From assembly GCA_002269645.1 (NCBI GenBank), contig NIVC01000040.1, positions 558,001 to 622,000 on the forward strand: DNA of 64,000 nt, read 5' to 3'. The notes under the pieces are model-generated. The model was not told the DNA's origin and made no database searches. It saw nothing but the letters and a program-made list of their open reading frames with translations. A program made the translations under genes and the position numbers. Positions 5,454-62,921 of this stretch are shown here, in pieces (position 1 is the first letter of the stretch; each line of letters opens with the position of its first letter). Source of the stretch: Macrostomum lignano (lineage: Eukaryota).

Positions 5454-8400
5454 TCAGGACGAGGCACACTGCACTCGCTGACCGCCGCCAGCTCCGTCTT
5501 CATCGTCGGAGTCTGCGCCGCCGGCTGCGGCCCGCATGAAGCCGCCGCGACCGCCTGCGGGTGAGTTTAGGTTAATAGTTAATTATTAACGACTTAAAAT
5601 AGGAAATAATATGATTATTAGGAATTATAAATAGTTAAAAAACAATTTTCAAAATTAGATTGCGACACGCCGTGCATAAAAAATCTTACTTTGGAAAACA
5701 TCTCTGCATAAATTTGGATAGTATGGTTGGCTGTGCTTTTTGGGTGGTGGTCTAATGTACATTAAGAGATGGGGTTTTGGGAGTGAAGGTGGTCTAATGT
5801 ACATTGAGGGACGGGGTTTTGGGGGTGAAGGTGGTCTAATGTACATTGAGGGACGGGGTTTTGGGAGTGAAGGCGGTCGAATGTACATTGAGGGACGGGG
5901 TTTTAGGAGTGAAGGTGGTCTAATGTACATTGAGGGACGGGGTTTTGGGAGTGAAGGTGGTCTAATGTACATTGAGGGACGGGGTTTTGGGAGTGAAGGT
6001 GGTCTAATGTACATTGAGGGACGGGGTTTTAGAGTGAAGGCGGTGGAGTGTACATTGAGGGACGGGGTTTTGGGAGTGAAGGCGGTCGAATGTACATTGA
6101 GGGACGGGGTTTTAGGAGTGAAGGTGGTCTAATGTACATTGAGGGACGGGGTTTTAGGAGTGAAGGTGGTCTAATGTACATTGAGGGACGTGGTTTTGGG
6201 AGTGAAGGCGGTCGAGTGTACATTGAGGGACGAGACTTAGCGGGAAGAGATTGAATTGTAATTAGTTGAAGAACGACCGCTGCCAAATTTCTTTAGATAA
6301 AGAGGCAAAGAAGACACTGCTTTATTAATAATCAACTACTAACTAATGCTGTTCAGTAGTGCAGCGCAGAAATATATTGTCTAAAAATAATAAATCTAAT
6401 AGTCAGACAGTTGATAAGAGCAAGCTGATTAATAAGCGGCATTAATGCGTATGGTTAGGTAAGAAACTACATAAGGTATAATATAAAATCAGACAGATTT
6501 AGTTACCAAACTGGCTCCTCATTCTCTCTAAAATGTTTGAGGAGCACGGGGTATTGTGAAGAAAGAGATTTAAATTTAATATCAAAGGCGAGGGTCGAGT
6601 ACAAAATACAAAGTGCATTATGTATTATATAAACTAAAACACTAAAGCAAGTGATATAAAATTTGCACAGTTGTCTATACTCTTAGTAAATTTGTTTGCT
6701 TGGTTAGTAACAAATTATTAATTGGCTAATGTTTGCGGAGAAATTAATCGAATTTACTACCGATATGTTTTGTAAGACACTTTTACTGAACTCTCATTGG
6801 ATTTAACAGCTTGTAAAGCAATAATAAACGAACATTACAAATAATTTTATAGCCTAAACATGCCATGTACATCTGCGTTGAGACCTAATCGAAATTCGAT
6901 CTAATATACCGATATGTTGTGTAATAAACATTTTCCATTAGAAAACTTACCGTCTCTCTGCTGCCTGGCATCCATTTCAGGGTCGAATTCGGTCATGACA
7001 GTCTCCTCAGCATCGTCGGGAACGATGACTTCCTGTCCTGGCGGAAGCAGTTTGCGCAGCTGCTTCAACTCTTTCTCGCTAAGGAAACCAGTTGGCGGGA
7101 ACTCCACAGTGAAATGTATTATAAGGCGGCCCTTCTCGAACGGATTCTTATAAGTTGGCATGCCCTCGTGTTCGACAGTTTTATAGGAGCCGTGGCGAAT
7201 CACTTCGCCAGGTCGCGACTCAATTAGCAGGCTGCGCTGATCCAGGGTGCCAATGACGCGTTTGAATCCGGTCAGCGACTCGTTCAGATTGATGGTGAGC
7301 TTCAAGATGAGGTCGCGACTCCGACGAATGAAGGTCTCGTGCTCGCGCTCCTCTAGCACGATGACGATATCCCCGGGCTCGAGTTCGGGATCTTGATCGC
7401 CTTCGCCGGTGAAACGAATCTGCTGGCCATCCTTCATGCCTTTGTCGATGTTTACTTCGAGTATCTTCTTCTCGCGATTTACCTGCATTTTTTGGATGTC
7501 AAGGGGATTTTTAATCTCAGATTGTACGCCTAGCAGTAGTATATTGCAACACAAACATTACTAACCTTTCGTCCTTCGCACTTTTTGCAACGATCCTTGG
7601 CGTTGATCACTTCGCCTTGGCCCTGGCAGTTGCGGCAAACAGTCTGGATCTGCTGCACCATGCCAGGAGCCAGCTGGCGAAGGTGCACCTCCATGCCAGA
7701 GCCGCGACAGTTCGAGCAGGCCTGAACAGCGCCGGCTTTGCCGCCCCGACCTTCGCATTTGTCGCAGACGACATTCTTTTGCACGGCTAATTTCCTAGTG
7801 GCGCCGTTGTACAACTCCTCCAGGGTGACGCCTAGCTGGTGGACAACGTCTTTACCGCGTCGGGGACCGCGCGAACGGCCGCCACCGCCAAAGAACATGT
7901 CGAATATGTCCATGGGATTGTGGAAGCTGAAGCCTTCGCCCGGCGTGCCCTCCTTCAGGGCCTGAAGTTGTAGGGGTAGGGAGAGAGCATTGTGGGTGAG
8001 TGAAGTCAGCGGGTAAAATGAGCACGCGAAATTATAATTTCATGCGAAATAGCAACTTCGGCGTGCAAATGGGGGAAATCATAAGGCACTTCATATTATA
8101 GCATGGGATAAATGGAGATGGGAATGGGATCAGTGATGGCGGGGAGAGGGGAATGGGATCAATGATGATGGGAGAGGGGAATGGGATCAATGATGATGGG
8201 GAGAGGGGAATGGGATCAGTGATGGTGGGCAGAGGGGAATGGGATCAATGATGATGGGAGAGGGGAATGGGATCAGTGATGGTGGGCAGAGGGGAATGGG
8301 ATCAATGATGGTGGGGAGAGGGGAATGGGATCAATGATGGTGGGGAGAAGGGAATGGGATCAATGATGATGGGAGAGGGGAATGGGATCAATGATGATTG

Positions 8401-17091: not shown

Positions 17092-20000
17092 TTATTCCTG
17101 TGTAGACATCTGTAGCTCCTTTTGCTGTCTTTTCACCGTTTCACTAAATTCTTATCTAACACTATAACTCCCATATCCCCTCTCGTAATTGAGATTTCTC
17201 ATTTCTTTCTACATCTTTACCGCGTCACCTTATATCTCTCCCCTTTCACATCTCTCAGCAGCTGTCTCCTCACATCTCTCCTCTACTCAAATCTCTCCCC
17301 TCTACTCACACCTCCCCCTCTACTACTCACATCTCTCCCCTACTCAATATCTCCCCCCTCTACTCACATCTCTCCCCCCTATCTCCCCCTCTACTCACAT
17401 CTCTCAACTCTCCTCACATCTCGCCTCTCTCCTCACATCTCTCCCCCCTATATCCCCCTCTACTTACATCTCTCCCCTCTACTCACATCTCTCCCCTCTA
17501 CTCATATCTCTCCCCTCTAATCACATCTCCCCCCTCTACTCACATCTCTCCCCCCTATCTCCCCCTCTACTCACATCTCTCCCCTCTCACATATCTCCCC
17601 TCTCCCATATCTCCCCTCTCAAATCTCTCCCTTCTCAAATCTCTCCCCTCTCCCATATCTCCCCTCTCAAATCTCTCCCTTCTCAAATCTCTCCCCTCTC
17701 ACATCTCTCCCCTCTCACATCTCTCCCCTCTCAAATCTCTCCCTTCTCAAATCTCTCCCCTCTCACATCTCTCCCCTCTCACATCTCTCCCCTCTCACAT
17801 CTCTCCCCTCTCACATCTCTCCCCTCTCACATATCTCCCCTCTCACATATCTCCCCTCTCACAGATCTCCCTTCTACTCACATCTCTCCCCTCTTACATC
17901 GCTCCCCTACCCTACTCACAACACAGCCGTAGCCACTCGATCTTCATCCAATCGATCCCCTTGTCTTAAGCCCTCCGTGCGCTGATTGTGAATCCAATTT
18001 GTCCCCTCAGTAATCCGGAGCTGATCGCCAGATGAATTGTGAACCGCCTTATTGCAGACATCTTGCGGGAAGGAAGGCGAAGCATAGACGCCGTTATTTT
18101 GAAATTCAGATTGATCAACGAAATCATTTTCAAAGCTCAACAACAAATCGCGAGATTTCAATTTGTATTCTGCAATTGGTTTTTGTAGCAATTTTTTGGC
18201 TTCCTTTTGTGCCTCTCCCTTATCTATTTGTCCTCTTTTATCGATTTGTCCCTCTCCATTATCGATTTGTCCCTCTCCATTATCGATTTGTCCCTCTCCA
18301 TTATCGATTTGTCCCTCTCCATTATCGATTTGTCCCTCTCCATTATCGATTTGGAACTCTTCATTATAAATTTGTCCCTTTTCATTATCGATTTTTCTCT
18401 CTAATATTGATTTTTCTCTCTATCGATTTTTTTCGCTAATTACGCTCGTATCGATTTACCCCTCTACATGATCGATCTGTCACTCTCAAGTATCGATTTT
18501 TCTCTCAATCATAGATTTTTCTCTGTCCGATCCCACTATCTCTCCACCTCTTTTACTAGCTCGTTGTCTGCTCCAAGCCAGCTCAGTCCAGAACAGGACA
18601 CCCACCATCCGAGCAGATCTGAATCGAATCCCCTTCGTCGTTCGCCTCGACCTCCATCTCTACAGTTGCAGCCTCTGAACCCGGAGACGACGTAGATGAA
18701 GACGGAGGCTGCGGTTGAGTCTGTGGAATCGTTGATTGTATGAAAGTCGACATTTTTCCGTTTGCACCTGTGGGTGGGACACATTTTTTGACATGCTATT
18801 TGCTTTCTTGATAATTCATTTTAACTGAACCAATTATTTTTTGACCCTATCTGTAGCTGGCGCCCCCACTGTAGCTGGCGCCCCCACTGTAGCTGGCGCC
18901 CCCTCTGTAGCTGGCGCCCCCTCTGTAGCTGGCGTCCCCTCTGTAGCTGGCGCCCCCTCTGTAGCTGGCGCCCCCTCTGTAGCTGGCGCCCCCTCTGCAG
19001 CTGGCGCCCCCTCTGTAGCTGGCGCCCCCTCTGTAGCTGGCGCCCCCTCTGTAGCTGGCGCCCCCTCTGTAGCTGGCGCCCCCTCTGCAACTGGCGCCCC
19101 CTCTGCAGCTGGCGCCCCCTCTGTAGCTGGCGCCCCCTCTGTAGCTGGCGCCCCCTCTGTAGCTGGCGCCCCCTCTGTAGCTGGCGCCCCCTCTGTAGCT
19201 GGCGCTCCCTCTGCAACTGGCGCCCCCCTCAATCATCGGGTGTAAGAACAGACTTACCCTTAATTCTCTTGGACGAGAGTTTCTTTGTCGGTGGCAACGT
19301 CGACATCAGAGCGACAACATTTGCTTCGTTGTTTGCCCAAATGGCCATCCGTTTGTAGCTTTCTCGGCCCTTCTCGGTCAGTTTTGGCCACGGCTTCGGC
19401 TTGCTTAGCAGCTCGGACACCGTGCCCTGGGACAGGCCCAGCACGCGTCTGGAAATTCATTGATCTTATCTGTACATGTTGTGTACTCGATAGAGACACA
19501 TCTTCGGACAAGACACCTTTTTCGGACAACAAACATTTTCGGACAAGACACGTTTTCGGACAAGATAAATTTTCGGACAAGATACATTTTCGGACAAGAT
19601 ACATTTTCGGACAAGATACATTTTCGGACAAGTCACATTTTCCGACAACAAACATTTTCGGACAAGACACATCTTCGGACAAGACACATTTTCGGACAAG
19701 AAACATTTTCGGACAAGAAACATTTTCGGACAAGATACATTTTCGGACAAGTCAAATTTTCCGACAACAAACATTTTCGGACAAGACACATCTTCGGACA
19801 AGACGCATTTTCGGACAAGTCACATCTTTGCTGGAACTTTTCCTATCTGAAATATTGAGTCACTGAGCCCTTCTATATTTTTAAGTTACTTTGGTTCAAA
19901 ACAATGTATAAAAATATAATTAAAATTAAACAAAAAATATTTTTTACCTGGCAAACAATCTCTGTCCAATCCCGTGCCTGCCTAATAGCTTTCTGACTTT

Positions 20001-21421
20001 GCTGGCAATGCTTGCCGTGTCTAGGATGTCAGCTGTGGCTAATTGAAACTGACTGACAGATTCGCTGTTGTATTGCATTCGACGCTTCTGGCCTTCCATT
20101 TGAGTGCAGTCACTGCGGCATGTGGGGTGTGGGAAATGGGGGGTAAGCATCCAGTGACACGGGTGGGATGTGGGGTGTGGGAAATGGGGGGTAAGCATCC
20201 AGTGACTTGGGGGGGTGTGGGGTGTGGGAATTAGGTGGTAAGCATCCAGTGACACGGGTGGGATGTGGGGTGTGGGAAATGGGGGGTAAGCATCCAGTGA
20301 CGCGGGTGGGATGTGGGGTGTGGGAAATGGGGGGTAAGCATCCAGTGACGAGGGTGGGATGTGGAGTGTGGGAAATGGGGGGTAAGCATCCAGTGACGCG
20401 GGTGGGATGTGGGGTGTGGGAAATGGGGGGTAAGCATCCAGTGACTTGGGGGGGTGTGGGGTGTGGGAAATGGGGGGTAAGCATCCAGCAGCCACGTGAT
20501 CAATAGGGAGCCACTTGGTCAATAGGGAGCCACATGATCAGTAGGGAGCCACGTGATCAATAAGGAGCCACGTGATCAAAAGAAATCACGTGATCCATAA
20601 GGAGCCACGTGATCAATAAGTAACCACGTGACCAAAAGAAATCACGTGATCCATAAGGAGCCACGTGATCAAAAGAAATCACGTGATCCATAAGGAGCCA
20701 CGTGATCAATAAGTAACCACGTGACCAAAAGAAATCACGTGATCCATAAGGAGCCACGTGATCAAAAGAAATCACGTGATCCATAAGGAGCCACGTGATC
20801 AATAAGTAACCACGTGACCAAAAGAAATCACGTGATCCATAAGGAGCCACGTGATCAATAGGGATCCATGCGATCAATAAGGAGCCAGGTGATCAATAAA
20901 GAGCCACGTGATCAATACGAAGCCACCACGTGATTGATAAAAACCCCCACGTGATCAATAAGAAATCACATGATCAACAAGATATCACGTGATCACTAAG
21001 AAGTGGTAAATGATGCCAGCCCACCTTAAAAGTCGCTCCTTCACACTGGCATAGTCGGCGCAGTGAGCCAACTCCAGTTTGAGCTGTCGTATTGTCTCGT
21101 CACGCTGGGCGATCTGACTTCTCAGGCGATCCAACTGTTGTTTCAATTTGTGGTGGATTCTTACTATGAGTCAATATATGGCTAGGTGAAGGAGATAGGG
21201 GTCACTGAGGACAGTTTTACCTTTAATTGCACGCTCTCTTTCAGCACAAAGACCGCCGTCGTAAGTTGTTCAATCTGAAAGAATTGTGAACTTCCAGTCA
21301 AGGTCAATGTTAATATTGATTCTGTGAGTTTATTTTCTAAATGAGTCCGCAATATACACTGCACCTGAGCCTTTTGATCGAAATCTGACAGAATTGAGGA
21401 CTTTGATTCCTCCAGTGACAT
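17092..21421 (-). CDS. CUX-like: CUX/Cut-derived protein: short coiled coil + single CUT domain + divergent homeodomain, 8 coding exons (21421-21365, 21274-21221, 21134-21025, 20112-19948, 19448-19258, 18767-18606, 18169-17920, 17143-17092), ~346 aa
   Basis: The CUT domain spans a phase-2 intron: LDTASIASKVRKLLGRHGIGQRLFAR|RVLGLSQGTVSELLSKPKPWPKLTEKGRESYKRM. The preceding IAQRDETIRQLKLELAHCADYASVKERL resembles the end of the CUX/CASP coiled coil. TNWIHNQR resembles CUX helix 3 (WFHNYR). All phases are consistent. The start codon and the acceptor at 21135 are less certain. Confidence 0.8.
17215..17910. repeat. Pyrimidine-rich degenerate minisatellite (CTCACATCTCTCCCCT)n in CUX-like intron
   Basis: Direct inspection; generates spurious SPL/LTS ORFs. 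Confidence 0.9.
18215..18500. repeat. 21-bp minisatellite (TTATCGATTTGTCCCTCTCCA)
   Basis: Five or more perfect units plus degenerate flanks; intronic. Confidence 0.9.
18848..19228. repeat. 18-bp GC-rich minisatellite (CTGTAGCTGGCGCCCCCT)
   Basis: About 21 units; intronic; open in several frames only because the unit is a stop-free multiple of 3. Confidence 0.95.
19495..19830. repeat. 18-bp minisatellite (TTTTCGGACAAGACACAT)
   Basis: About 18 variable units; intronic. Confidence 0.9.
20120..20490. repeat. 48-bp G-rich minisatellite
   Basis: GGGTGGGATGTGGGGTGTGGGAAATGGGGGGTAAGCATCCAGTGAC, about 8 units, starting a few nt from the 20113 acceptor. Confidence 0.95.
20490..21000. repeat. ~19-bp minisatellite whose core is the E-box CACGTG
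   Basis: About 22 intact CACGTG copies in the contexts GCCACGTGATC, ATCACGTGATC and ACCACGTGACC. Confidence 0.95.
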
Positions 21422-21524
21422 TTTTATTGATTCGCGCGAGTTCTGTGTTTAAAGAAAAATATGAATAACTAAGGCTTATTATACTCGTAATTATATATAG
21501 ATGCATATACAATTACCATTGTAT

Positions 21525-21903
<379 letters not shown>

Positions 21904-39663: not shown

Positions 39664-42600
39664 GGCTAAATTGATTGATCTAGATCGGCTCCAAAGCTGG
39701 CCCTTGTTTTGTCAATTAATTTCTATTTAATTTCTCTCTGTTGCCACTACCTTTTTGAGTTAATGTATAGTAAGTGAACTAAGCATGAAATTATCAGTTT
39801 ATTAGACCTCCACAAATTAATTGGCATTTTGATATCATTAGTAAAACAAAAATTATAAACTAGATACACTGTTTCTTAGAAATTATTAGATTAGACCAAA
39901 ATTTAGGATACATAATTTTCTTATATTGCTACAATAGAAAGGCATATTATTAAAAGTAGAATCAAATAAATTAAAGTATGCTCACTAGGCATTCTATGAA
40001 GTAGTAAAAGTTGCAAATATAAACCATTAATGAATTTTCATTAAAAAATAATGGAACTATGAAATATTTTTATAAGTAAAGACAGATTGCTAGATGAGTA
40101 GTTTCACAGATAGGTTAATCATGATACCAAAAATTATAAAGTTTATATTAGAGATGACAACATCAATACATGTGCAACCCCCCCCCCTGATTTACACTAG
40201 CTATGCAGCTTACTTTTTGACCAAAAAAGTGACCTACCTATGAAAGAAACCTAACTCCTAAAAAATAGTAATGTAATTTTGGGTAAATGGCAAGAGTAAC
40301 TAGAGTGCATTATTACTTCAGTAATAGTAATACTAGTAATACTAAATAATACTAAGTCTGGTTTTAGAGTGGGAACTTTTGTGACTTACCTTGGCTTGGC
40401 CTCTTGCCAGTTGGCCAGCTCAATCAGGTGTGGTGCATATATGGATGGCAAGGTAGTTCTTTTTTAACAGATGTATATTTTTAGTTTTTAATAAAGCTTT
40501 TGTAAAATTTTAAGTTTTTATGGAAATTTCAGATAATAGAGCTCTAATAGTTGTTTATATTTGAATAAATTATTTAATGCCAATTTTAAACAATATACCA
40601 GGTAGATATTGCACCAAAACTTTTTTCATTTTGCACTTTATTAAGTTAAAATTTGATTTTTATAAAATTATAAATATAAAAAGGCCATTAGTAGGATTCT
40701 TAAAAGTTAGCTATAAATATTATAGTTTTCTTACATCAAATACCTATGCCACCAAGTGCAATGCCACTATCACCTTTGCCATTGCTATTATTGCTGATTA
40801 AGCATTGTTAATATCAGGTGCCTATACAAAGAAGGTAAGATTGTATATACTAAACAAGTTCCTATAAGATTTATACTAACATAACTTCTAACAATCTTGT
40901 TTCCCTGATTAGGGTTTATAATTTCCTTGCTAAAAATACTAAAAATGGTCTTTTCCTTGGTAAAAGTATCTGTACATTTAAAATTTAGTTTTGTAACCTA
41001 TACTATATTATAAGGCATGCTAGTATAGCTATAGCTATGGGATCCTAGGGCAAATATGGTGAAATAGGTGCCTACGGCAATGTGCATTGCTATTTTGTTT
41101 TTTGGAGTTGTGATTTTTCGGGTTAATGATATTTTAGGTTTATGATGTGTGTTTCTATCAATTTCGAAGTTATGATATTTCAGGTTTATGATATTTTGGG
41201 TTAATGATAGAAAGTGCTTTTCAGAGTTGTGATTTTTTAGGTTTGTGATGCCCCCTAGTCCATGTACTGTAGCTGTAGCCATAAGTAAAACTATAGCTTA
41301 TTCCAATTCTCCATATTCTATAGCCATAAGGACCCCAATATTACTATATTCCCATAGTTCCTATAGCTATAGCTATATTTTAACAAAAAGTCTAGAAAAC
41401 AATATTTTGAATCAAAAAGATAACCTGGTGCCACTACAGCTATGGGAATCTATAGAAAATGATATCAACTACCATATTTCTGTAGTCGTAGCAGTAAGAG
41501 CAGCTAGCTATCAAAAGTTCTAGCAATGTTCAACACTATTTTGTTTTTTAGAGTTATGATATTTTGGGTTTGTGACATTTAGGGTTTATGATGGGCAATG
41601 CTATTTTGGTTTTTGGAGTTGTGATTTTTTGTGTTTATAATATTTAAATATTTCAATATTGTCAATCCTAATGTAAGTTACTGTGATAAATAATTTTATC
41701 TTTTAAGTTAAACTTAATACTATTTATTATTATATAATAGAAATACTTTATATTATATGTATATTTCCTATATATAAATTTGACATGACTGACAGTCATT
41801 TATTTGTTACTACATATAAATTATACAAATAAAAGCTTTTAGACAATTAATCATTAAGATTATTTTCCTTTTAACAATAGGCCTAGGCCTATTTAAGAAT
41901 TTAAAAACCAAAAAATTTCTGGTTGCATTGCAACTTCTATATATACAAATAGTCTGTAAAATTAGTTTAACAAATTTTGCAAAGATAAGTTTATAAAATA
42001 TAATAATAATAATGATATCAGTATTAAGCCTACCTAGCTATAATAATCTATATATTAAAGGAAATGCTTATCCCCATGGTCCTATGTCAATAATTCCAAT
42101 TTTATCTACATGGAACTGTGTTGATAATTTCCAGCTTATCCCCACAGCAACTTATTGAAATAGCTGCCACCATTCAAGTCTATAGGCCTGATAAACAGCC
42201 TAGGACTATGGGGATAAGCACTTCTTACTAGTGATATCTGAATATTCAGATTCGAAATCCAAATCTGAAAAAAGTCTCACTTTTTTAGAAATCCAAATGT
42301 TTTGGATTTGGAAATTTTATTTTCCAAATTTCCAAATATGCTTTCAAATATGAAAAAATCAAAAAACCAAAACAAAACTATGCAAACATAAAAGAAATAC
42401 AACTTTTTAAAAAAAGGTCAATTAAAAAAACAAGAACTCAAAATTTAATGTCATATTGTTCTTTGTTACAATTGTCTGCTTTTGCAGTAATGTATATTTT
42501 TTAAGTATTATTAAGCAAAGTTACTTAACTTTGGGACATTTGAGGCATTTAACCTAAAGTCGCAGAAACATGTTTAGGTAATCACTGTTTAAGTGTAATC

Positions 42601-44389
42601 TTTACTTTGTTTTTTAAAAATGCAAATGCAATGGACTTTATGTGCACTGTACATGGTAAAGTTATCAAATTGCACAAATATATAGTATTAGTAATTGGAA
42701 TTAGTTAAATTAGATACAAAAGAATTAAGTTCAATTCAATTCAGATACTTGATAGATATAGTATAAGCCCGAGCTAAATTAAATCTTGTCAGTAAATTAA
42801 TGTACAATACTAATATGATTACTAATTAGATGAAAAGGGATTTTTGTCACTAAAAGGTGTCATAGTTACTTCTACCATTTACCTTTTACTTTTTTTACAT
42901 TTGGAAACAAATTTGGATATTCAGATTTGGATTTATAATTTTTTGTACATTCAGATTTGGTTTCAGAAACTTTAAAAAATCTACATTTGGTCCATCAAGT
43001 GCTACTTCCTACATTAAATGCTAAATAATTAATTAAATTGCTTTCACTTCTACTTGTACTACTAGGCTATACCTTCTTGCTGGATTGACTCTTCTAATAG
43101 TTTATTGCCAGACCATCTATCACCAAAACATCTGTCACTGGATTATCTTGTCACCAGATTGACTAGATAGGCCCAGGGCCTACCTAATATAGTATAGGAG
43201 GCCTATAGGCCTAGGCATTATTATTTTCCATTACACTGGGTACACTGGGTACACTGGAAAGCTTGAAAATAATCATCTTAGAGCAAGATAGTTCAGAAAT
43301 CATTGAAAAAAAATAATTTAACGAACGAAACTTGAAGATTGCCTAATAATATAATATAATACTTTAAGATATAATTAAATTTTAACTTAGATTGCATTGT
43401 TATCATATTCTAATGGGGTTATACCTAGCTTAAAATTGGCTAAAAATTACCATAGATATGATTTGTTAGTCTTGACTATCCTAGACTTATTGAATAGGCC
43501 TCTAAACTTGATAAGCAAAGGCTTACCGCTTACCTTAAATCTAAAGAAAAGTTAAATTTCTACAACTAAAGGCATGCTAGTTTTTAAGATAAATCAGCTG
43601 CAAATTGTGTCAATAGCCATGCAATTCTAATCGCTAAGCAACCCGCAAGTTTCATAAAAAAAGTGAAATGCTGTCAATGGATTGGAATCAAGTTATGTGC
43701 ATTTACTACAAATTAAGTTAATACAATTGTATGCAGAACATATTGCACTGCAGAACGATAAGTAATACTGAATAAAAAGATTAAACAGCCATTTAAATTA
43801 TTCACTGTGGAAGAAAAAGTGACAAATATTAAGGAAAATACTCAAACTAAAAGATTCGCGAAAAAATATTTCAATGCTACCCAGACCATTTTTGGACATA
43901 AAACTAAAGTGAGCTTACAACTGACTGACTCATACGTCGAGAATAAAGTAAGGGAAGCAAAAAAACTAACAGAGGTTACGTTAAACTAGACTTTTCACAA
44001 TTTAAAAGACTTACTCACTCATCGAGCTTAAGAAAAATGGAGGTAGGGGATACTGATTTTAAAGAGGTCCCCAACGGCTGAAAACACATTGATCTGTTCA
44101 GTAGGTTTAAATTGCAAAGTTGTGATGTATAACAAAGCTTTTAAATCAAATTACAATTCTAGCCCTATAAATTTCTCAGAACGCAGTTATTGGCATTGAT
44201 CAATGTAGTTAACTTATTATTAATTTTTTTGCTTTTTCTATTTTAAAAAGTTAGCCTCAGTTAATTTTTAAAGTAAGCTGGATTCGCGTGCTCAGTAAAA
44301 TTAATTAGCTTTTAAGGCTTGAGCCTTAAATTGGATGTAAAATACTTTCAAAATTTTAACATTTTACTACTTTTTACATTGCTCAACGC

Positions 44390-44634
44390 GAAAGTGCGGG
44401 CAGAATAGCTTAACATTTTAGGGAAAACCAAATTGGTGGCACACTTACTCAGAATTCTAAATCATCATAATAGAAATTAAAATAATAGTGTTCAAAATAG
44501 TTCGGAACAACCAAGACTTTAATGAGGGGAGCCAGGGGCTTCGCCACCGGGAGGACAGCGGGGACTTGTCTATTGCTTGTCAATTGACGGCCGTTGTGGA
44601 AATCAATAATTTTGCTTTTAGGGCAAACAAAATC
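44390..44634 (+). repeat. 245-bp direct repeat, copy 1
   Basis: Matches 50673-50917 with one visible mismatch (AGAATTCTAA vs AGAATTTTAA). Contains the left end of a hAT-like element at 44533. Confidence 0.93.
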
Positions 44635-45240
44635 CTATATACTAAAAATGGTCTGTCTGTGTCTATGTGATCGATTAGAGAAAAAATGGCTGGACCGATT
44701 TTGTTCGAACTTGCACTGTTCAATCAGAAATTTTCCCGTGACTGTACATGCATCGTGGCTAAGAAATTGCTCGATGCTAAAGGCATTAAATATTCGAAAA
44801 ACATGCTTTTTTGCAAAGGTCAAGCAAACTTTTCGACTTGAAATGCATTGTAAGAATGCTAGAGAAAAAACTGACTGGTTGAATTCTGATTCTGAAATAG
44901 ATTGCATCATAACTGAATTGTAACTCCGACTTGAATTGAAAATGCAGTGTGGAAGCGTAGCACCAGACTTGATTTAAATTGCGTAACCATGCATATTGTT
45001 AACTGATACTGACTGACTGAGAAACTGATTATGTCATAACTGCTTCGTGTAATTTACTCTATGCTTGGATTTTCAAGTGTTGAATTATATAAGTGCAAAA
45101 TTTGATGTTATCAAAACGATGAGAGCTAGCCTAGAGGTGAACAAACTGAGCTGCTAAATGCAGCGACGATGGTTCGAATTTTCATAGAGTATAATTTTTT
45201 TAATTAAAGCTTTTCAACGTCAGGAAAACTAAAAGACTTT
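44633..45240 (+). mobile_element. Possible Helitron-like 5' end
   Basis: A|TC start followed by CTATATACTAAAAATGGTCTGTCTGTGTCT...GGCTGGACCGATTTT, resembling non-autonomous Helitron 5' termini. No canonical CTRR 3' end found. Confidence 0.35.
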
Positions 45241-45242
45241 TT

Positions 45243-48200
45243 AAAAAGAAGCGTCATGTAAAAATCATAGAAGCGTCATATAAAAAATCATAGTAGCGTT
45301 ATATAAAAATCATAGATGCATCATTTAAAAAATCATAGAAGCGTCATGTAAACAATCATAGAAGCGTCATGTAAAAAATCATAGAAGCGTCATGTAAACA
45401 ATCATAGAAGCGTCATGTAAACAATCATAGAAGCGTCATATAAAAATCATAGAAGCGTCATGTAAACAATCATAGAAGCGTCATGTAAACAATCATAGAA
45501 GCGTCATGTAAACAATCATAGAAGCGTCATGTAAACAATCATAGAAGCGTCATGTAAACAATCATAGAAGCGTCATGTAAACAATCATAGAAGCGTCATG
45601 TAAAAAATCATGGAAGCGTCATGTAAACAATCATAGAAGCGTCATGTAAAAAATCATAGAAGCGTCATGTAAACAATCATAGAAGCGTCATGTAAACAAT
45701 CATAGAAGCGTCATGTAAACAATCATAGAAGCGTCATGTAAAAAATCATGGAAGCGTCATGTAAACAATCATAGAAGCGTCATGTAAAAATCATAGAAGC
45801 GTCATGTAAACAATCATAGAAGCGCCATGTAAAAAATCATAGAAGCGTCATGAAACAATCATAGAAGCGTCATGTAAACAATCATAGAAGCGTCATGTAA
45901 AAAGCATAGAAGCGTCATGTAAAAATCATAGAAGCGTCGTATAAACAATCATAGAAGCGTCATGTAAACAATCATAGAAGCGTCATGTAAAAAATCATAG
46001 AAGCGTCATGTAAACAATCATAGAAGCGTCATGAAACAATCATAGAAGCGTCATGTAAAAAATCATAGAAGCGTCATGTAAAAAGCATAGAAGCGTCATG
46101 TAAAAATCATAGAAGCGTCGTATAAACAATCATAGAAGCGTCATGTAAACAATCATAGAAGCGTCATGTAAAAAATCATAGAAGCGTCATGTAAACAATC
46201 ATAGAAGCGTCATGAAACAATCATAGAAGCGTCATGTAAAAAATCATAGAAGCGTCATGTAAAAAGCATAGAAGCGTCATGTAAAAATCATAGAAGCGTC
46301 GTATAAACAATCATAGAAGCGTCATGTAAACAATCATAGAAGCGTCATGTAAACAATCATAGAAGCGTCATGTAAACAATCATAGAAGCGTCATGTAAAC
46401 AATCATAGAAGCGTCATGTAAACAATCATAGAAGCGTCATGTAAACAATCATAGAAGCGTCATGTAAACAATCATAGAAGCGTCATGTAAAAAATCATGG
46501 AAGCGTCATGTAAACAATCATAGAAGCGTCATGTAAAAAATCATAGAAGCGTCATGTAAACAATCATAGAAGCGCCATGTAAAAAATCATAGAAGCGTCA
46601 TGAAACAATCATAGAAGCGTCATGTAAAAAATCATAGAAGCGTCATGTAAAAAGCATAGAAGCGTCATGTAAAAATCATAGAAGCGTCGTATAAACAATC
46701 ATAGAAGCGTCATGTAAACAATCATAGAAGCGTCATGTAAAAAATCATAGAAGCGTCATGTAAACAATCATAGAAGCGTCATGAAACAATCATAGAAGCG
46801 TCATGTAAAAAATCATAGAAGCGTCATGTAAAAAGCATAGAAGCGTCATGTAAAAATCATAGAAGCGTCGTATAAACAATCATAGAAGCGTCATGTAAAC
46901 AATCATAGAAGCGTCATGTAAAAAATCATAGAAGCGTCATGTAAACAATCATAGAAGCGTCATGAAACAATCATAGAAGCGTCATGTAAAAAATCATAGA
47001 AGCGTCATGTAAAAAGCATAGAAGCGTCATGTAAAAATCATAGAAGCGTCGTATAAACAATCATAGAAGCGTCATGTAAACAATCATAGAAGCGTCATGT
47101 AAACAATCATAGAAGCGTCATGTAAACAATCATAGAAGCGTCATGAAACAATCATAGAAGCGTCATGTAAAAAATCATAGAAGCGTCATGTAAAAAGCAT
47201 AGAAGCGTCATGTAAAAATCATAGAAGCGTCGTATAAACAATCATAGAAGCGTCATGTAAACAATCATAGAAGCGTCATGTAAACAATCATAGAAGCGTC
47301 ATGTAAACAATCATAGAAGCGTCATGTAAACAATCATAGAAGCGTCATGTAAACAATCATAGAAGCGTCATGTAAACAATCATAGAAGCGTCATGTAAAC
47401 AATCATAGAAGCGTCATGTAAAAAATCATGGAAGCGTCATGTAAACAATCATAGAAGCGTCATGTAAAAAATCATAGAAGCGTCATGTAAAAAATCATAG
47501 AAGCGCCATGTAAAAAATCATAGAAGCGTCATGAAACAATCATAGAAGCGTCATGTAAAAAATCATAGAAGCGTCATGTAAAAAGCATAGAAGCGTCATG
47601 TAAAAATCATAGAAGCGTCGTATAAACAATCATAGAAGCGTCATGTAAACAATCATAGAAGCGTCATGTAAAAAATCATAGAAGCGTCATGTAAACAATC
47701 ATAGAAGCGTCATGAAACAATCATAGAAGCGTCATGTAAAAAATCATAGAAGCGTCATGTAAAAAGCATAGAAGCGTCATGTAAAAATCATAGAAGCGTC
47801 GTATAAACAATCATAGAAGCGTCATGTAAACAATCATAGAAGCGTCATGTAAAAAATCATAGAAGCGTCATGTAAACAATCATAGAAGCGTCATGAAACA
47901 ATCATAGAAGCGTCATGTAAAAAATCATAGAAGCGTCATGTAAAAAGCATAGAAGCGTCATGTAAAAATCATAGAAGCGTCGTATAAACAATCATAGAAG
48001 CGTCATGTAAACAATCATAGAAGCGTCATGTAAACAATCATAGAAGCGTCATGTAAACAATCATAGAAGCGTCATGAAACAATCATAGAAGCGTCATGTA
48101 AACAATCATAGAAGCGTCATGTAAAAAATCATAGAAGCGTCATGTAAACAATCATAGAAGCGTCATGTAAAAAATCATAGAAGCGTCATGTAAACAATCA

Positions 48201-49510
48201 TAGAAGCGTCATTTAAACAATCATAGAAGCGTCATGTAAACAATCATAGAAGCGTCATGTAAACAATCATAGAAGCGTCATATAAAAATCATAGAAGCGT
48301 CATGTAAACAATCATAGAAGCGTCATGTAAACAATCATAGAAGCGTCATGTAAACAATCATAGAAGCGTCATGTAAACAATCATAGAAGCGTCATGTAAA
48401 AAATCATGAAGCGTCATGTAAACAATCATAGAAGCGTCATGTAAAAAATCATAGAAGCGTCATGTAAACAATCATAGAAGCGCCATGTAAAAAATCATAG
48501 AAGCGTCATGAAACAATCATAGAAGCGTCATGTAAAAAATCATAGAAGCGTCATGTAAAAAGCATAGAAGCGTCATGTAAAAATCATAGAAGCGTCGTAT
48601 AAACAATCATAGAAGCGTCATGTAAACAATCATAGAAGCGTCATGTAAAAAATCATAGAAGCGTCATGTAAACAATCATAGAAGCGTCATGAAACAATCA
48701 TAGAAGCGTCATGTAAAAAATCATAGAAGCGTCATGTAAAAAGCATAGAAGCGTCATGTAAAAATCATAGAAGCGTCGTATAAACAATCATAGAAGCGTC
48801 ATGTAAACAATCATAGAAGCGTCATGTAAAAAATCATAGAAGCGTCATGTAAACAATCATAGAAGCGTCATGAAACAATCATAGAAGCGTCATGTAAAAA
48901 ATCATAGAAGCGTCATGTAAAAAGCATAGAAGCGTCATGTAAAAATCATAGAAGCGTCGTATAAACAATCATAGAAGCGTCATGTAAACAATCATAGAAG
49001 CGTCATGTAAACAATCATAGAAGCGTCATGTAAACAATCATAGAAGCGTCATGAAACAATCATAGAAGCGTCATGTAAACAATCATAGAAGCGTCATGTA
49101 AAAAGCATAGAAGCGTCATGTAAAAATCATAGAAGCGTCGTATAAACAATCATAGAAGCGTCATGTAAACAATCATAGAAGCGTCATGTAAAAATCATAA
49201 AAGCGTCATGTAAAAATCATTGAAGCGTCCTGCAGAAATCGTAGAAGCGTCATGAAATAATCATAGAAGCGTCATGTAAAAAATCATAGAAGCGTCATGT
49301 AAACAATCATAGAAGCGTCATGTAAACAATCATAGAAGCGTCATGTAAACAATCATGGAAGCGTTATGTAAAAAAATCATAGAAGCGTCATGTAAAAAGC
49401 ATAGAAGCGTCATATAAACAATCATAGAAGCGTCATATAAAAAATCATAGAAGTGTCATGTAAAAATCATAGAAGCGTCATGAAAAAATCATAGGAGCCT
49501 CATTTAAAAA
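45243..49510. repeat. 4.3-kb satellite, 22-23-bp monomer (CATAGAAGCGTCATGTAAACAAT), 181-bp 8-mer higher-order repeat
   Basis: Six recurrent monomer variants occur in fixed order. Sequence near 46021 recurs 181 bp later, and 46741 recurs at 46922. Confidence 0.97.
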
Positions 49511-49669
49511 CTAATGAAAGTGTCATTTAAAAAATTAAGAAGCATCATGGTAGAATAAAAGAAGCGTCATGTCAGACATGAAGGGTGTCATGTAAAAATT
49601 AAATGCAGCTATAATGCTGTGCTGGGGAGAAAAACTGAGACGTAAAGGCTCTCAGAGAATAACTGAGAT

Positions 49670-50640
49670 TACGGGGGGGTTCTGAGATGTCAAAGCAAAA
49701 GTCAGAAGCTACTTCAAAGTTCATGTACTTTACTCAATTTTTTTATTGCATTATTTGTTGGCTCGCCACGGGGGGGGCGCTGATAGAAGAAGAGTCATGT
49801 AAAAAATAAAAGTAGCACTACGTATACATAAAAGAAAAGTCATGTCGAAGTTAAAAGATTCATTTGGGAATTGCTACGATGTCAAAGCTTGGTGGAAATC
49901 GTTATAGTGCTGTGATTCTTAAAGAAGGAATCACTAAAATGTCAAGGCTTAGGGGAGAAGAATTGCTGAGATTTCAAGGCTTTAGGTTGGGTTAAAGTTA
50001 GGTTTAGGTCAGGTGTGGGTTGAGGGTTATATTTTATCGGATTTCAAGGTTAACAGAATAACAGGGGATTTTTTAGATTTCAAGGTTTATGGGGGCCATC
50101 GCTGACATGTTAAGACTTACGGGGGGAATATCTGAGATGTCAAGGTTCACGGGGGTATAAATGAGATTTCAAGGCTAAAGTCAGAAGCTACATGTAGTTT
50201 ATTGAAAACTTTTTATTACATTATTTGATGCCTCCTCTGGGGAGGGATCGCTGATAAAAAAAGCGTAATGTAAAAAATAAAATAAGCTTCATGTCGAAGT
50301 TAAGAGATTCATTTGGGAATCTCTACGATGTCGAGGCTTGCAGGGAATCGCTATAATGCTGTAGTAGTGCTATAATGACTCTTAGAGAGAATTACTGAAA
50401 TTTCAATGCTTTAGGGTTAGGTTAGGGTTAGGGTTAGGGTTAGGGTTAGGGTTAGGCTAGGGTTAGGGTTAGAAGGTTGACAGATATTTTTAGATTTCCA
50501 AGGCTTATTTGGGGCATTGCTGAGATGTCAAGGGGGGAAGTTGATATGTTAAAGCTTGTGGGGGGGGGGGGAATTACTGACATGTCAAGGCTTACAAGGT
50601 TTGACAGGAGATTTTTTAAGATTTCAAGGATACATGTAGT
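49670..50640. repeat. Diverged ~470-bp tandem duplication containing satellite-monomer-like motifs
   Basis: AAAGTCAGAAGCTAC, TTTTTTATT(G/A)CATTATTTG and CATGTCGAAGTTAA..GATTCATTTGGGAAT each occur twice, about 470 bp apart. Confidence 0.75.
50411..50472 (+). repeat. Interstitial telomeric-type repeat (TTAGGG)n
   Basis: Seven perfect TTAGGG plus TTAGG/CTAGGG variants; a degenerate paralogous tract lies at ~49981-50030. Confidence 0.85.
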
Positions 50641-57485: not shown

Positions 57486-58179
57486 TGTGAATTGATTTAT
57501 CTTATATCGATGTGAACTGTGTGCCGGCTTGTGCTTTTGAATGCTCAATTTCATTGTACGATTTTACACCCTCTCGCCTCCCCTGTGCTTATCGATTTCT
57601 ATTTCTATGTACAGTACTTTGCTATGTACGTCATTCGAACTATTACTACTTAATTCTAAAATACAATATAAAGACCGACACGTCAGTTTAGAAACGCTGT
57701 CTACAACTTGTGGCTTAAGACAATTCAATCGCTTCGTCTGAATTCATCACACTTTTACATTAAATGGACGGATAACGATGTCATAGGTCGACTGAACATC
57801 GGTGTAATGTAAAAGTACATATCTGTCAGTGACCGTTATTAGACATCAGGAACATTACCGAAGTATGTCCTACTGCTCGGCGACTACGTCGAGAAGAGAA
57901 CGGTACGCACAGACGATGATGATTAGTTGCTTAACTTTGTGTATGTCCTAATTTATTTGCGCCTCGGTGAAAGTAAATGCCGCGACCTCCACGTGGTCAG
58001 GACGGTAAGCCGCGCTTAACTGCTGCGGCGGCCAACAGCGGCAGGACCAAGCGAGGGCAGCAGAGCGAGCGTCGGCGTGTTGAGCGTCGGCGTGAGCGAA
58101 ATCGGCGCTGTCGGCGACGTGGTGCTGCCCGTCGAGCTGCTGCCGCGCTGGCCCATACGGATCCTCGGGTGGCGCCAGG

Positions 58180-61100: not shown

Positions 61101-62130
61101 TCGTTTGGTCGCCAGTACGTGAAATTCTGACGTCGCCTGGGGTCGTAATGGCGACGTCGCCGCGCGCGACAAAATGGCTGGTTTGGCGACGTTATTTTGC
61201 GACGTGTTAGCGACGTCGAGGCAACTGCATTGCTTTGACTGGGCTGTGTGGCCAGTGAGGTCGCCAGAGTGATGAATCGCGTGCTCTTCGGTGAGGAGGC
61301 ACCCAACGAATGAACCACAGTGCACATCGTTGCATTTTCTAAGATGCCGGGCACCACAAGTTATAAAAAACATCGAGGTATCTGCCTTCAGACCTGCCCT
61401 GCGAAGCTGTTTAACCGGATGCTGCTATCGCGGTTTCAGCCCGTGTTGGATCCGTACCTGCGCCAGAGCAGCTGATTTCCGCCATCATGGCGATATACTG
61501 CGATACGAAAGCTACTGTTTCAAAACCCGACGGCCTATCGGACTTCTTTGAGACGTCCTTTGGGGTGCTTCAGGGAGATACGCTTACGCCGTTCCTGTTC
61601 GTTCTGGTGCTTGACTGGGTGCTGCGGACCGCTCTTCCTACCAACGACGACGGCTTTCTGTTGCGGCGACGCGTGGGTCGACGTCAATCGGAGAGGCGTC
61701 TCAGCGTTCTTGGCTACGCCGACGATCTCGTTCTGCTGTCCTCAACTGTCGAGGGCGCACAGCGACAACTGGACAAGCTATAGTTGCTGTTGCGGCGAGT
61801 GTCGGCCTGGTGGTCAACACGCAGAAAACCGTCGTGCTCTGCGTGCCGGACGACATTGGGGCTGCGATTTTGTGCCCAGGCGCTGATGGACGGAGCCTCC
61901 ACGTTGTCAGCAGTTCGTCTACCTCGGCGGTCTGGTTCCCGGCGTCCGCGAGGATCTGCGCCGCCGCTGGCTTGCCTGGGCTGCCTTTCGTTCTGTTCTG
62001 TGAGGGCAGTCCTACAGTCCGAGGCCTTACCTGACCGCCAGAGGGCGGCGCTGTTCCAGGCGGTGATCGAGACCGTCCTGTTGTACAACGCCGAGCCCTG
62101 GACGCTGACGGAGTCGCTCGAGCAACAAGA
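58180..62130 (+). mobile_element. Decayed non-LTR retrotransposon (RTE-type LINE), interrupted by a DNA element
   Basis: AP-endonuclease start CDVIALQEV (58315 on). RT segments: GKALGPDEVPIE (frameshifted), HRGICLQTCPAKLFNRML...LDPYLR, GVLQGDTLTPFLF, GYADDL. C-terminal LFQAVIETVLLYNAEPWTL. In-frame stops at 61311 and 61781, plus deletions and frameshifts. Confidence 0.9.
58687..61243. mobile_element. Non-autonomous EnSpm/CACTA-like DNA element, 2557 bp, 2-bp TSD (CT)
   Basis: CCCAAGCAAGGCAGT..GCCTCGACGTCGCTA and TAGCGACGTCGAGGC..ACTGCATTGCTTTGACTGGG are imperfect inverted ends with GACGTCGC subterminal motifs, flanked by CT on both sides. Excision restores the RT frame (EALLIH|CVASEV). The superfamily assignment is inferred. 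Confidence 0.75.
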
Positions 62131-62921
62131 ATGAGTTAGGAGTCGACTGGCAGAGCCACACCCGGGTTCAAATTAATATGTTAAATAATCCAAATTTTCT
62201 GACAAAATGTTAGTTTCGGATAGCGTTTCGAAAGTCCAATGAACCAGTTTTTGAGTGGTATTTTTATCGTATTCTATCTTAAACATTAAAGAAAAGCAAT
62301 TGATTTGTGCCAAACTTGCACCAATAAAGATTAAAAAAAATTCAGGAATCGCTGATTAGTCTCCTGACTTCTGATTATAAAATTTCTTATGCTAAAAGGA
62401 TTAAGATATTTGAGGAACAGGTTTTGCATAATGGTTACAATGGTCCGTCTGAAATAGAGAGATTCCAAGTTGACTACATAGCCCGTGTTAGGGTTAGGTT
62501 TTGGACATGGCTTGAGAGCTACGAGACGCACCCCGAGGACCACGGGAAGACTTTACCAATGCTCAAGGCTGGATGCTGATATTTTAGACTATATAGCTGG
62601 CTTTTGAGGAGCTGATGCTTTCTGCTTTGATTTCACGATTCACATAATTTGCGAGTACATAGCGTCATTATTCTATAATGTCCATTAATCCCCCGACTAA
62701 ACCTTTGAAGAGAATTTGACGTCTGGCGCTACCGTGCAGATCAATCTGGGTATGCCATCAAACTGTGTACATCGACTTATGCAGAATAGCATATTAGGTC
62801 GTATTAAGACGTCAAATTTAATTTTTATTCGGAAAAGTATATGCACTAATATTGCAGAGACTGACAGAATAGTTAAGACAAAGCCAATGCAAGTTATCGT
62901 TGTTTCATCGTTCCTATAAGT

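What the first reader, a model, noticed from the sequence alone, without database searches (positions are those of the whole stretch)
17092..21442. Reduced CUX derivative: one CUT repeat plus an insertion-bearing His50 homeodomain
Canonical CUX has a long CASP-shared coiled coil, three CUT repeats and a homeodomain. ONECUT has one CUT but a different signature (SQGTLSDLL, FFMN). This gene has only the tail of the coiled coil (ADY.SVKERL) and one CUX-type CUT (IGQRLF..VLGLSQGTVSELL.KPKPW). It also has FQNNGVYASP...NWIHNQR, with W48/H50/N51/R53 kept but F49 changed to I and roughly 8 extra residues before helix 3. It may be an undescribed CUT-class architecture or a degenerating paralog.
Basis: partly seen in the sequence, partly recalled or inferred. 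Interest (0 to 1): 0.7.

Follow-up and report, generated by a model that had tools for sequence, protein, structure and literature searches.

The report
Flatworm one-CUT gene, homeodomain lost

Summary
The window is Macrostomum lignano contig NIVC01000040.1. The gene is BOX15_Mlig012808g1 (PAA92759.1, 340 aa), on the minus strand with CDS 21421-16918 in 8 GT-AG exons.

Confirmed:
- There is exactly one CUT domain (Pfam 86 bits, AF2 pLDDT about 96). It is the invertebrate CUX repeat-1 type, not ONECUT.
- A helix of about 70 aa precedes it and resembles the end of the CASP/CUX coiled coil.
- No other CUT or homeodomain exon occurs in the 64 kb. An Acf1/BAZ1A-like gene lies directly upstream.

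Not confirmed: the insertion-bearing His50 homeodomain.
- Its N-terminal half (18169-18062) lies upstream of the acceptor used by the transcript-derived annotation.
- That stretch is frameshifted, with stops, in both paralogous copies, and resembles a real CUX homeodomain no more than shuffled sequence does.
- Pfam, PDB and an exhaustive 1.84-billion-protein HMMER search find no homeodomain.
- AF2 gives no fold, and residues 181-340 are predicted disordered.

What survives is NW[F/I]HNQR, a CUX-type helix-3 relic; the paralogs still have F49. Between copies, exons are better conserved than introns (3.2% against 8.5%, no indels, dN/dS about 0.45), so this is probably a functional homeodomain-less CUX derivative.

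The parts
21365..21421 (-). Exon 1. ATG at 21421-21419; encodes MSLEESKSSILSDFDQKAQ, the start of the N-terminal helix.
   Evidence: The 8-exon model translates exactly to P0001/PAA92759.1. The called gene starts at window 21421. A stop lies in frame just upstream.
21221..21274 (-). Exon 2, IEQLTTAVFVLKESVQLK (coiled coil).
   Evidence: AF2 predicts a helix over aa 5-61 with pLDDT 82-92.
21025..21134 (-). Exon 3, LDRLRSQIAQRDETIRQLKLELAHCADYASVKERLL. This is the end of the coiled coil and holds the ADY..VK..L motif.
   Evidence: Heptad signal over aa 38-73: 64% hydrophobic at a/d positions against 12% elsewhere; 61 of 5000 shuffles reach this.
19948..20112 (-). Exon 4: linker plus the first half of the CUT domain. 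The domain starts at about 20024.
   Evidence: Pfam CUT; tblastn.
19258..19448 (-). Exon 5: second half of the CUT domain (to about 19304), then the basic stretch PPTKKLSSKRIK.
   Evidence: AF2 predicts five helices over aa 106-177 with pLDDT 94-97. Foldseek top hits are the CUX2 CUT domains.
18606..18767 (-). Exon 6: S/P/Q/E-rich linker, predicted disordered.
   Evidence: Seven nonsynonymous against one synonymous difference from the paralog.
18062..18169 (-). It is an open-frame 5' extension of exon 7, and most likely intron.
   Evidence: It is excluded from all four database models. Both paralog loci have a 35-nt gap plus a 2-nt insertion and in-frame stops here. Its alignment score against a true CUX homeodomain is 19, against a shuffle mean of 20.4.
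17920..18061 (-). Exon 7 as transcribed: DVCNKAVHNSSGDQLRITEGTNWIHNQRTEGLRQGDRLDEDRVATAV(L).
   Evidence: The exhaustive phmmer search matches only this part of P0001, aa 245-294.
17979..17999 (-). NWIHNQR, a relic of CUX-type homeodomain helix 3 (N47 W48 I49 H50 N51 Q52 R53). The paralogs have NWFHNQR and NWFHHQR.
   Evidence: The motif scores 36-42 against a shuffle mean of 18.5 (sd 3.6) when aligned to the P0009 homeodomain. H at position 50 is the CUX subclass residue (PMC4901127).
16918..17059 (-). It contains a basic, NLS-like cluster, SKRKSTRP.
   Evidence: The donor GTGTT|GTGAGT after 17920 removes the TGA at 17918-17916.

Best explanation
The locus is a transcribed gene of Macrostomum lignano, BOX15_Mlig012808g1. 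It is one of three copies left by the species' recent genome duplication. It descends from a CUX/CASP-type CUT-class homeobox gene and has been cut down to three parts:
- the last roughly 70 residues of the coiled coil;
- one intact CUT repeat of the CR1 type;
- a disordered C-terminal tail of about 160 residues, in which only the heptad NW[F/I]HNQR recalls the former CUX homeodomain.

It is therefore a homeodomain-less CUT protein, not an atypical homeodomain protein.

Inferred mechanism: the protein is nuclear (basic clusters after the CUT domain and near the C-terminus). It pairs through its coiled coil, with itself or with CUX/CASP, so that two CUT domains come together. This would make up for the known inability of a single CUT repeat to bind DNA stably. 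It would then act as a low-affinity, fast-exchanging DNA binder or competitor at ATCGAT-like CUX sites.

Shown: gene structure, the CUT domain, the helical N-terminus, absence of a homeodomain, the paralogs, and conservation of exons over introns. Inferred: dimerisation, nuclear localisation, DNA binding and regulatory role.
For: Identity and structure:
- The window is 100% identical to NIVC01000040.1.
- The 8-exon GT-AG model equals PAA92759.1. UniRef lists a second identical entry (A0A1I8H9P7, n=2).
- The GenBank annotation derives from genome-guided transcript assembly (PMC5730564).

CUT domain:
- Pfam 86 bits; CUX2 repeats at about 2e-20 against ONECUT at 5e-12.
- 113 of 130 CUT domains in the top hits share its CR1 signature.
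- It falls in the CR1 clade in the NJ tree, with 78% bootstrap.
- All columns that are invariant in 56 CR1 sequences are kept.
- AF2 pLDDT is about 96, and Foldseek top hits are the CUX2 CUT domains.

Coiled coil:
- AF2 predicts a helix over aa 5-72.
- A heptad signal is present.

No homeodomain: (control).

Single CUT only: tblastn with CR1, CR2, CR3 and homeodomain queries finds nothing else in the 64 kb.

Selection:
- Exons differ by 3.2% with no indels in 881 nt. Flanking introns differ by 8.5% with 19 indel events.
- dN/dS is 0.43-0.46, one-sided Fisher p of about 0.03-0.04. The coiled coil shows 1 nonsynonymous against 5 synonymous differences.

A single CUT repeat needs a partner domain to bind DNA: PMC8231510 and PMC10515288.
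Against: - Purifying selection is weak and rests on only 28 substitutions. The linker has more nonsynonymous than synonymous changes.
- This copy has lost a 42-aa exon that the paralogs keep. It has also changed F49 of the relic motif. Both fit ongoing decay.
- No orthologue outside M. lignano was found, so long-term conservation is unproven.
- Dimerisation, nuclear localisation and DNA binding are untested.
- The homology of the N-terminus to CASP rests on a human sequence recalled from memory, not on a database sequence.
- I could not see RNA reads directly. An alternative transcript using the upstream acceptor at 18169 is not excluded for this copy.
Confidence: 0.72

Rival explanations
1. 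One reading: the gene encodes one CUT repeat plus a functional, atypical CUX-type homeodomain. It would have His50, F49I and about 8 extra residues before helix 3, and be encoded by a long exon 18169-17916.
For: The frame is open from a possible acceptor (ttgcag|AA at 18170) through NWIHNQR in this copy. W48, H50, N51 and R53 are present. BLASTP of the long exon against a CUX homeodomain gives 19 bits, with a pairwise E of 0.003. Homeodomains with loop insertions are known, for example in the HNF1 and CMP classes.
Against: - All four database models start the exon at 18061, and the GenBank models are transcript-based.
- Both paralogs have frameshifts and stops in the extension.
- The extension alone scores no better than shuffles against a true CUX homeodomain, and all the signal is in the heptad.
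- Pfam finds no homeodomain at E<=10. PDB gives no hit at E<=10, while a real CUX homeodomain hits 118 chains. The exhaustive phmmer search finds no homeodomain.
- In either alignment the core positions L16, L34/L38 and V45 are not hydrophobic (reading).
- AF2 gives pLDDT 34 and no three-helix bundle.
- Open frames run through the neighbouring minisatellites too, so an open frame is weak evidence here.
Confidence: 0.05
2. It is a decaying duplicate: transcribed, but on its way to becoming a pseudogene with no function of its own. Its ORF is still intact only because the duplication is recent.
For: - M. lignano is a recent polyploid with much redundancy, and three near-identical copies exist.
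- dN/dS is about 0.45, not low. The linker ratio is above 1.
- This copy lost an exon.
- Two of the three amino-acid changes in exon 7 fall in the relic motif.
- No relatives were found outside the species.
Against: - There is no frameshift, stop or indel in 881 nt of exons in any of the three copies, while the flanking introns have 19 indel events in about 1400 nt.
- Exon divergence is 2.7-fold lower than intron divergence.
- dN<dS with p of about 0.03.
- Every residue that is invariant in CR1 is kept.
- The reduced architecture is shared by both diverged copies, so it predates their split and has been maintained since.
Confidence: 0.13
3. It is functional but does not bind DNA in a sequence-specific way. 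The coiled coil would tie it to CASP/CUX as a modulator or dominant-negative partner. Alternatively, the lone CUT domain would work through protein-protein contacts, as CUT domains do when they stimulate base-excision-repair enzymes.
For: A single CUT repeat cannot bind DNA alone, and CUT domains take part in protein-protein interactions and stimulate base excision repair (PMC8231510). [quoted passage not shown] The coiled coil is the most constrained part of the protein: 1 nonsynonymous against 5 synonymous changes.
Against: There is no direct evidence. The helix-3 region of the CUT domain (SQGTVSELL) and all invariant residues are conserved, which fits DNA binding equally well. The existence of a canonical CUX/CASP partner in M. 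lignano was not established here.
Confidence: 0.1

Closest known systems
CUX subclass of CUT-class homeobox genes (Drosophila cut, vertebrate CUX1/CUX2, C. elegans ceh-44)
   Same: The CUT domain is of the CUX type and falls in the invertebrate CR1 clade. It follows a coiled-coil segment that resembles the end of the CASP-shared region. The relic NWFHNQR has His at position 50, which is the CUX-specific residue.
   Different: It has one CUT repeat instead of three and no homeodomain. The coiled coil is about 70 aa instead of about 400. No CASP-specific exons occur in the window.
Short CUX1 isoforms and CASP (products of the canonical CUX1 locus)
   Same: The canonical locus also yields products that lack some or all of the DNA-binding domains (PMC10515288). 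CASP shares the coiled coil and lacks the CUT repeats and the homeodomain.
   Different: Here the reduced form is hard-wired in a separate small gene of 4.5 kb, flanked by unrelated genes. It is not an isoform of a full locus. The combination of coiled-coil tail plus CR1 only is not among the isoforms described in the papers read.
ONECUT (HNF6) family
   Same: One CUT domain per protein.
   Different: The ONECUT CUT domain is a weaker match (5e-12 against 2e-20) and lies outside the CR1 clade. ONECUT has a real homeodomain with F48/M50, which is absent here.
Pax genes that secondarily lost all or part of the homeobox (Poxn, Poxm, Sv; PRD class)
   Same: This is the precedent for a homeobox-class gene that keeps its second DNA-binding domain while the homeodomain is lost (PMC4901127).
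   Different: It is a different class, with a PAIRED rather than a CUT domain. No CUT-class case of this kind was found in the papers searched.
Amphioxus Acut (Takatori and Saiga 2008)
   Same: A lineage-specific, atypical CUT-class gene 'with a unique domain structure' (PMC10515288).
   Different: The Acut sequence and architecture could not be obtained with these tools, so no comparison was made. Common origin is unlikely, given that both appear lineage-restricted.

Membership tests
CUT domain (Pfam PF02376) | Sequence match above the curated threshold | tested here: met
   86.2 bits against a cut-off of 24.4, covering profile positions 3-73 of 79.
CUT domain (Pfam PF02376) | Five-helix CUT fold | tested here: met
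   AF2 predicts five helices over aa 106-177 with pLDDT 94-97. Foldseek top hits are 1x2l, 1wh8 and 1wh6, the CUX2 CUT domains, at E of about 1e-6.
CUX subclass | CUT repeats of the CUX type rather than ONECUT or SATB | tested here: met
   CUX2 repeats at 2e-20, ONECUT at 5e-12, SATB at 0.15 or worse. CR1 clade with 78% bootstrap. CR1 signature shared.
CUX subclass | Three CUT repeats | tested here: not met
   One Pfam CUT hit. tblastn with CR1, CR2 and CR3 queries finds only exons 4-5 in the 64 kb. The paralogs also have one CUT domain.
CUX subclass | Homeodomain with His50 | tested here: not met
   No homeodomain by Pfam, PDB or exhaustive phmmer. Only the NW[FI]HNQR heptad remains. The tail is predicted disordered.
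CUX subclass | Long N-terminal coiled coil shared with CASP (absent in Drosophila cut) | tested here: inconclusive
   Only a helix of about 70 aa is present. The upstream neighbour on the same strand is an Acf1/BAZ1A-like gene. No database CASP sequence was available to test homology properly.
Homeodomain (Pfam PF00046) | Sequence match to the homeodomain profile | tested here: not met
   No hit at E<=10 for the long exon or for the whole C-terminus. A control CUX homeodomain hits 118 PDB homeodomain chains, while this region hits none.
Homeodomain (Pfam PF00046) | Three-helix bundle with core residues L16, F20, W48 and F49 | tested here: not met
   AF2 on the long exon gives pLDDT 34 and no bundle; this was a single-sequence run, so it is a weak test. 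In the ungapped alignment, positions 16, 20, 34, 38 and 45 are G, S, N, D and G. Position 49 is I in this copy.
ONECUT | ONECUT-type CUT domain plus a homeodomain with F48/M50 | tested here: not met
   The CUT domain groups with CUX CR1. The relic motif has W48 and H50.
Acut (amphioxus) | Sequence similarity or shared architecture with Bf-Acut | not testable with these tools
   The Acut sequence could not be obtained. Only a one-line mention was found in PMC10515288.

The most novel reading that the evidence does not exclude
The coiled-coil tail plus single CR1 architecture, without a homeodomain, may be a stable and functional new CUT-class subfamily. It could even be the only CUX-derived transcription factor left in Macrostomum. 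It would bind DNA as a coiled-coil dimer of CUT domains. This would be the first documented secondary loss of the homeodomain in the CUT class, a parallel to the homeobox-less Pax genes.
Probability: 0.2. Interest if true: 0.55.

Novelty: new variant of a known kind. Interest (0 to 1): 0.35.

Why it matters
If the protein is functional, it is a natural experiment on what a CUT repeat can do without a homeodomain or a second repeat. Biochemistry on human CUX1 says a lone repeat cannot bind DNA, so a maintained gene of this form implies either dimer-mediated binding or a non-DNA role for the CUT domain.

It would also add the CUT class to the short list of homeobox classes in which the homeobox was secondarily lost while the companion domain survived.

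In practical terms, it corrects a tempting mis-annotation. In this minisatellite-rich genome, open frames extend well beyond real exons. Homeobox surveys that search for motifs such as WFxNxR would wrongly count this gene as a homeobox gene.

Tried and rejected
1. It spliced consistently for exons 3-7 but could not be joined in frame to exons 1-2. I abandoned it when the database protein showed the real acceptors at 21134 and 18061 and the extra last exon.

2. A homologous-protein search with the 74-aa N-terminus, meant to find the M. lignano CASP/CUX parent, returned 'no candidate'. The same tool with a 57-aa CUX homeodomain, meant to build a homeodomain profile, returned one protein. Both searches were wasted, because short queries fail the word filter. 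As a result I made no hhalign profile comparison, and I did not identify a canonical CUX/CASP gene of M. lignano.

3. A motif search for a DY..[IVL]K.EL coiled-coil end upstream of CR1 in the 118 other hits found none, because those hits are fragments.

4. The exhaustive phmmer search gave three weak hits, P0145 to P0147. I inspected P0145 and P0146: both are unrelated repeat proteins, and P0146 matches on 'FKVTDGTNW'. P0147 (E=1e-4, six stretches) was not inspected and I assume it is the same kind of hit.

5. Looking up P0011, one of the closest non-Macrostomum CR1 sequences, to learn its organism gave only an SRA run number.

6. I considered arguing that the open extension in this copy is the ancestral homeodomain helix 1. 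The net indel difference from the paralogs is 33 nt, a multiple of three. I rejected it as unsupported, because the extension is no more homeodomain-like than shuffled sequence and there is no outgroup to polarise the indels.

7. Literature searches for this gene, its identifiers, or CUT-class genes in Macrostomum found nothing.


Full report
**Where the window comes from.** A protein assembled from the exons in the finding retrieves two near-identical Macrostomum lignano proteins. Looking up the first, P0001 (PAA92759.1, 'hypothetical protein BOX15_Mlig012808g1'), gives a locus on contig NIVC01000040.1 of assembly GCA_002269645.1. That locus is 100% identical over 16,504 nt to window 27421-10918, reverse strand. 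The called gene corresponds to window 21421-16918 on the minus strand.

**Gene structure.** Eight exons reproduce P0001 (340 aa) exactly, and every intron is GT-AG. The exons are 21421-21365, 21274-21221, 21134-21025, 20112-19948, 19448-19258, 18767-18606, 18061-17920 and 17059-16918. The GenBank annotation of this assembly comes from a genome-guided transcriptome (StringTie/TACO plus a de novo assembly, with ORFs from TransDecoder; PMC5730564). UniRef lists a second, identical protein entry (A0A1I8H9P7, n=2).
- Exon 3 starts at LDRL, not further upstream.
- Exon 7 starts at DVCNK (18061), not at 18169.
- The TGA at 17918-17916 is spliced out by a consensus GTGAGT donor.

**What is confirmed.** There is one CUT domain:
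- Pfam PF02376 scores 86.2 bits.
- phmmer against the PDB gives the three human CUX2 CUT repeats at about 2e-20, ONECUT at about 5e-12 and SATB at 0.15 or worse.
- Of 130 CUT domains taken from the top hits and references, 113 carry the same L[TS]E[KR]G[RK][ED][ST][YF] signature. This signature is present in the first CUT domain of the two-CUT proteins P0003 and P0011. It is absent from the CR2 and CR3 domains of P0004 to P0009.
- In an NJ tree the domain sits in that CR1 clade, apart from CR2, CR3 and ONECUT, with 78% bootstrap support.
- All columns that are invariant across 56 CR1 sequences are kept.
- AF2 with that alignment gives the five-helix domain at pLDDT 94-97, and Foldseek returns the CUX2 CUT structures first.

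A tblastn search of the whole window with proteins carrying CR1, CR2, CR3 and a homeodomain finds nothing besides exons 4-5. The next gene upstream on the same strand, ending at 25224, is an Acf1/BAZ1A-like gene with WAC, PHD and bromodomain regions. There is therefore no room for the long CASP coiled coil or for further repeats.

**The N-terminus.** AF2 predicts one long helix over aa 5-61 (pLDDT 82-92) and a second over aa 65-72. A heptad pattern is present; for aa 38-73, only 61 of 5000 shuffles reach the observed value. BLASTP against the end of the human CUX1/CASP coiled coil gives an ungapped 53-residue alignment ending exactly at ADY..VK..L, with a pairwise E of 6e-6.

**The claimed homeodomain.** Several lines of evidence count against it:
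- *Coding status.* The stretch holding FQNNGVYASP (18169-18062) is not in any of the four database models of the three copies. In both paralogous loci (L001 = Mlig004399g1, L005 = g2) it carries a 35-nt gap and a 2-nt insertion that put stops in frame. From 18061 onward the three copies align without any indel.
- *Sequence searches.* Pfam finds no homeodomain at E<=10 in the long exon or the whole tail. phmmer of the 130-aa tail against the PDB finds nothing at E<=10, whereas a genuine CUX homeodomain from P0009 finds 118 homeodomain chains. An exhaustive phmmer search of the 83-aa long exon against 1.84 billion representative proteins finds only P0001 itself (aa 245-294, the short exon) and three weak, multi-stretch hits. 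The two I inspected are unrelated repeat proteins.
- *Local alignment to the P0009 homeodomain, with shuffling.* All the signal lies in the heptad. The short exon scores 36 (42 in paralog g2) against a shuffle mean of 18.5, sd 3.6. The extension alone scores 19 against a shuffle mean of 20.4.
- *Structure.* AF2 on the long exon gives mean pLDDT 34 and no three-helix bundle; this was a single-sequence run, so it is a weak test. In the full protein, residues 181-340 have no secondary structure and pLDDT of about 40-50.

Open frames here are also poor evidence for coding. The same frame stays open through the neighbouring 21-nt minisatellite.

**What the heptad is.** The paralogs read NWFHNQR (g2 and the UniRef model) and NWFHHQR (g1) where this copy reads NWIHNQR. 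N47-W48-F49-H50-N51-x-R53, with His at position 50, is the CUX-subclass form of helix 3. ONECUT has M and CMP has K at that position (PMC4901127). A chance occurrence of this motif downstream of a CUX-type CUT repeat is very unlikely. I therefore read it as a true relic of the ancestral CUX homeodomain. It does not look constrained now: two of the three amino-acid differences in exon 7 between copies fall inside it.

**Is the gene alive?** Three copies exist. Copies g1 and g2 differ from each other at 1 of 881 sites, so in effect there are two diverged lineages. Comparing this copy with g1:
- Exons 1-7 differ at 3.2% of sites, with no indel.
- The 100-nt intron flanks differ at 8.5%, with 19 indel events.
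- There are 17 nonsynonymous and 11 synonymous differences, giving dN/dS of 0.46 (0.43 against g2), one-sided Fisher p of about 0.03-0.04.
- By region, the ratio is 0.06 in the coiled coil, about 0.6 in the CUT region and above 1 in the linker. These rest on very small counts.

The reduced architecture is common to both lineages, so it predates their split. This copy has in addition lost a 42-aa exon between the coiled coil and the CUT domain, with no DNA match in the window. I conclude that the gene is probably functional under relaxed constraint, and that this copy is the more eroded one.

**Mechanism (inferred).** Work on human CUX1 shows that a single CUT repeat does not bind DNA by itself. 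It does so together with a second repeat or the homeodomain. CUT domains also mediate protein-protein contacts (PMC8231510; PMC10515288). The conserved coiled coil could supply the missing partner by pairing two chains, or by pairing with CUX/CASP. Basic clusters after the CUT domain and near the C-terminus could serve nuclear import.

**What is not settled.**
- I did not establish whether M. lignano also has a canonical three-repeat CUX/CASP gene, or whether other flatworms have this reduced gene. Two of my three large protein searches were lost to short queries.
- I found no relative outside M. lignano that also matches outside the CUT domain.
- I found no paper mentioning the gene.
- A tapeworm 'cux/CASP-like' gene is listed in PMC6225667, so the family exists in flatworms.

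**Verdict.** The single-CUT, CUX-derived architecture is real and, as far as I could find, undescribed. The insertion-bearing homeodomain is not real. This is a new variant of a known kind, of moderate interest to people who study homeobox gene evolution.

Noticed in passing
window 17232-17910, 18206-18402, 18850-19227, 19494-19825, 20120-20488, 20490-21002, 21527-21903: Introns 3 to 7 of this small gene each hold one or two distinct minisatellites, with units of 16-64, 21, 18, 17, 48 and 19 nt. An (AGAC)94 microsatellite sits about 100 nt upstream of the ATG. Several of these arrays keep long open reading frames, which can mislead exon calling by eye.
   Followed up: partly
window 20490-21002 (intron 3): The 19-nt repeat unit AGCCACGTGATCAATAAGG carries a CACGTG E-box palindrome, giving roughly 27 tandem E-boxes inside the intron. 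I do not know whether this is a binding-site array or just a satellite.
   Followed up: no
L001 about 6945-7070 (paralog Mlig004399g1), against window intron 3 (21024-20113): The paralogs have an extra 42-aa exon (ASSSGEPQVESEETPIDLSVGSKKSIEPGYTVDEACLPYQT) between the coiled coil and the CUT domain. It has no DNA counterpart in the window copy, where satellites fill the intron.
   Followed up: yes
window about 39711-25224, minus strand: A large Acf1/BAZ1A-like chromatin-remodelling gene (WAC, two PHD fingers, bromodomain) lies directly upstream of the CUT gene. The same neighbourhood is kept at the paralogous locus L001. One of its introns or exons holds a long SSPCLTGV-type repeat (32817-31114).
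   Followed up: partly
window about 8932-6904 and 3931-2485, minus strand: A type-A DnaJ/HSP40 gene (J domain, CXXCXGXG zinc-finger region, DnaJ_C) and a bHLH(-zip)-like gene with Q-rich regions.
   Followed up: partly
window about 58000-62200, plus strand: Remnant of a non-LTR retroelement. There is a reverse-transcriptase fragment (RVT_1 at 27 bits, below the Pfam cut-off) and an upstream ORF with no Pfam hit. The element is broken into several frames.
   Followed up: no
window 40000-50000: An AT-rich block (GC 0.28-0.35, against 0.40-0.55 elsewhere) with no long complex ORFs.
   Followed up: no
tool behaviour: the search for homologous proteins returned 'no candidate' for a 74-aa query whose exact sequence is part of a database protein. 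It returned a single hit for a 57-aa canonical homeodomain. Short queries are effectively unsupported and still count against the cap.
   Followed up: no
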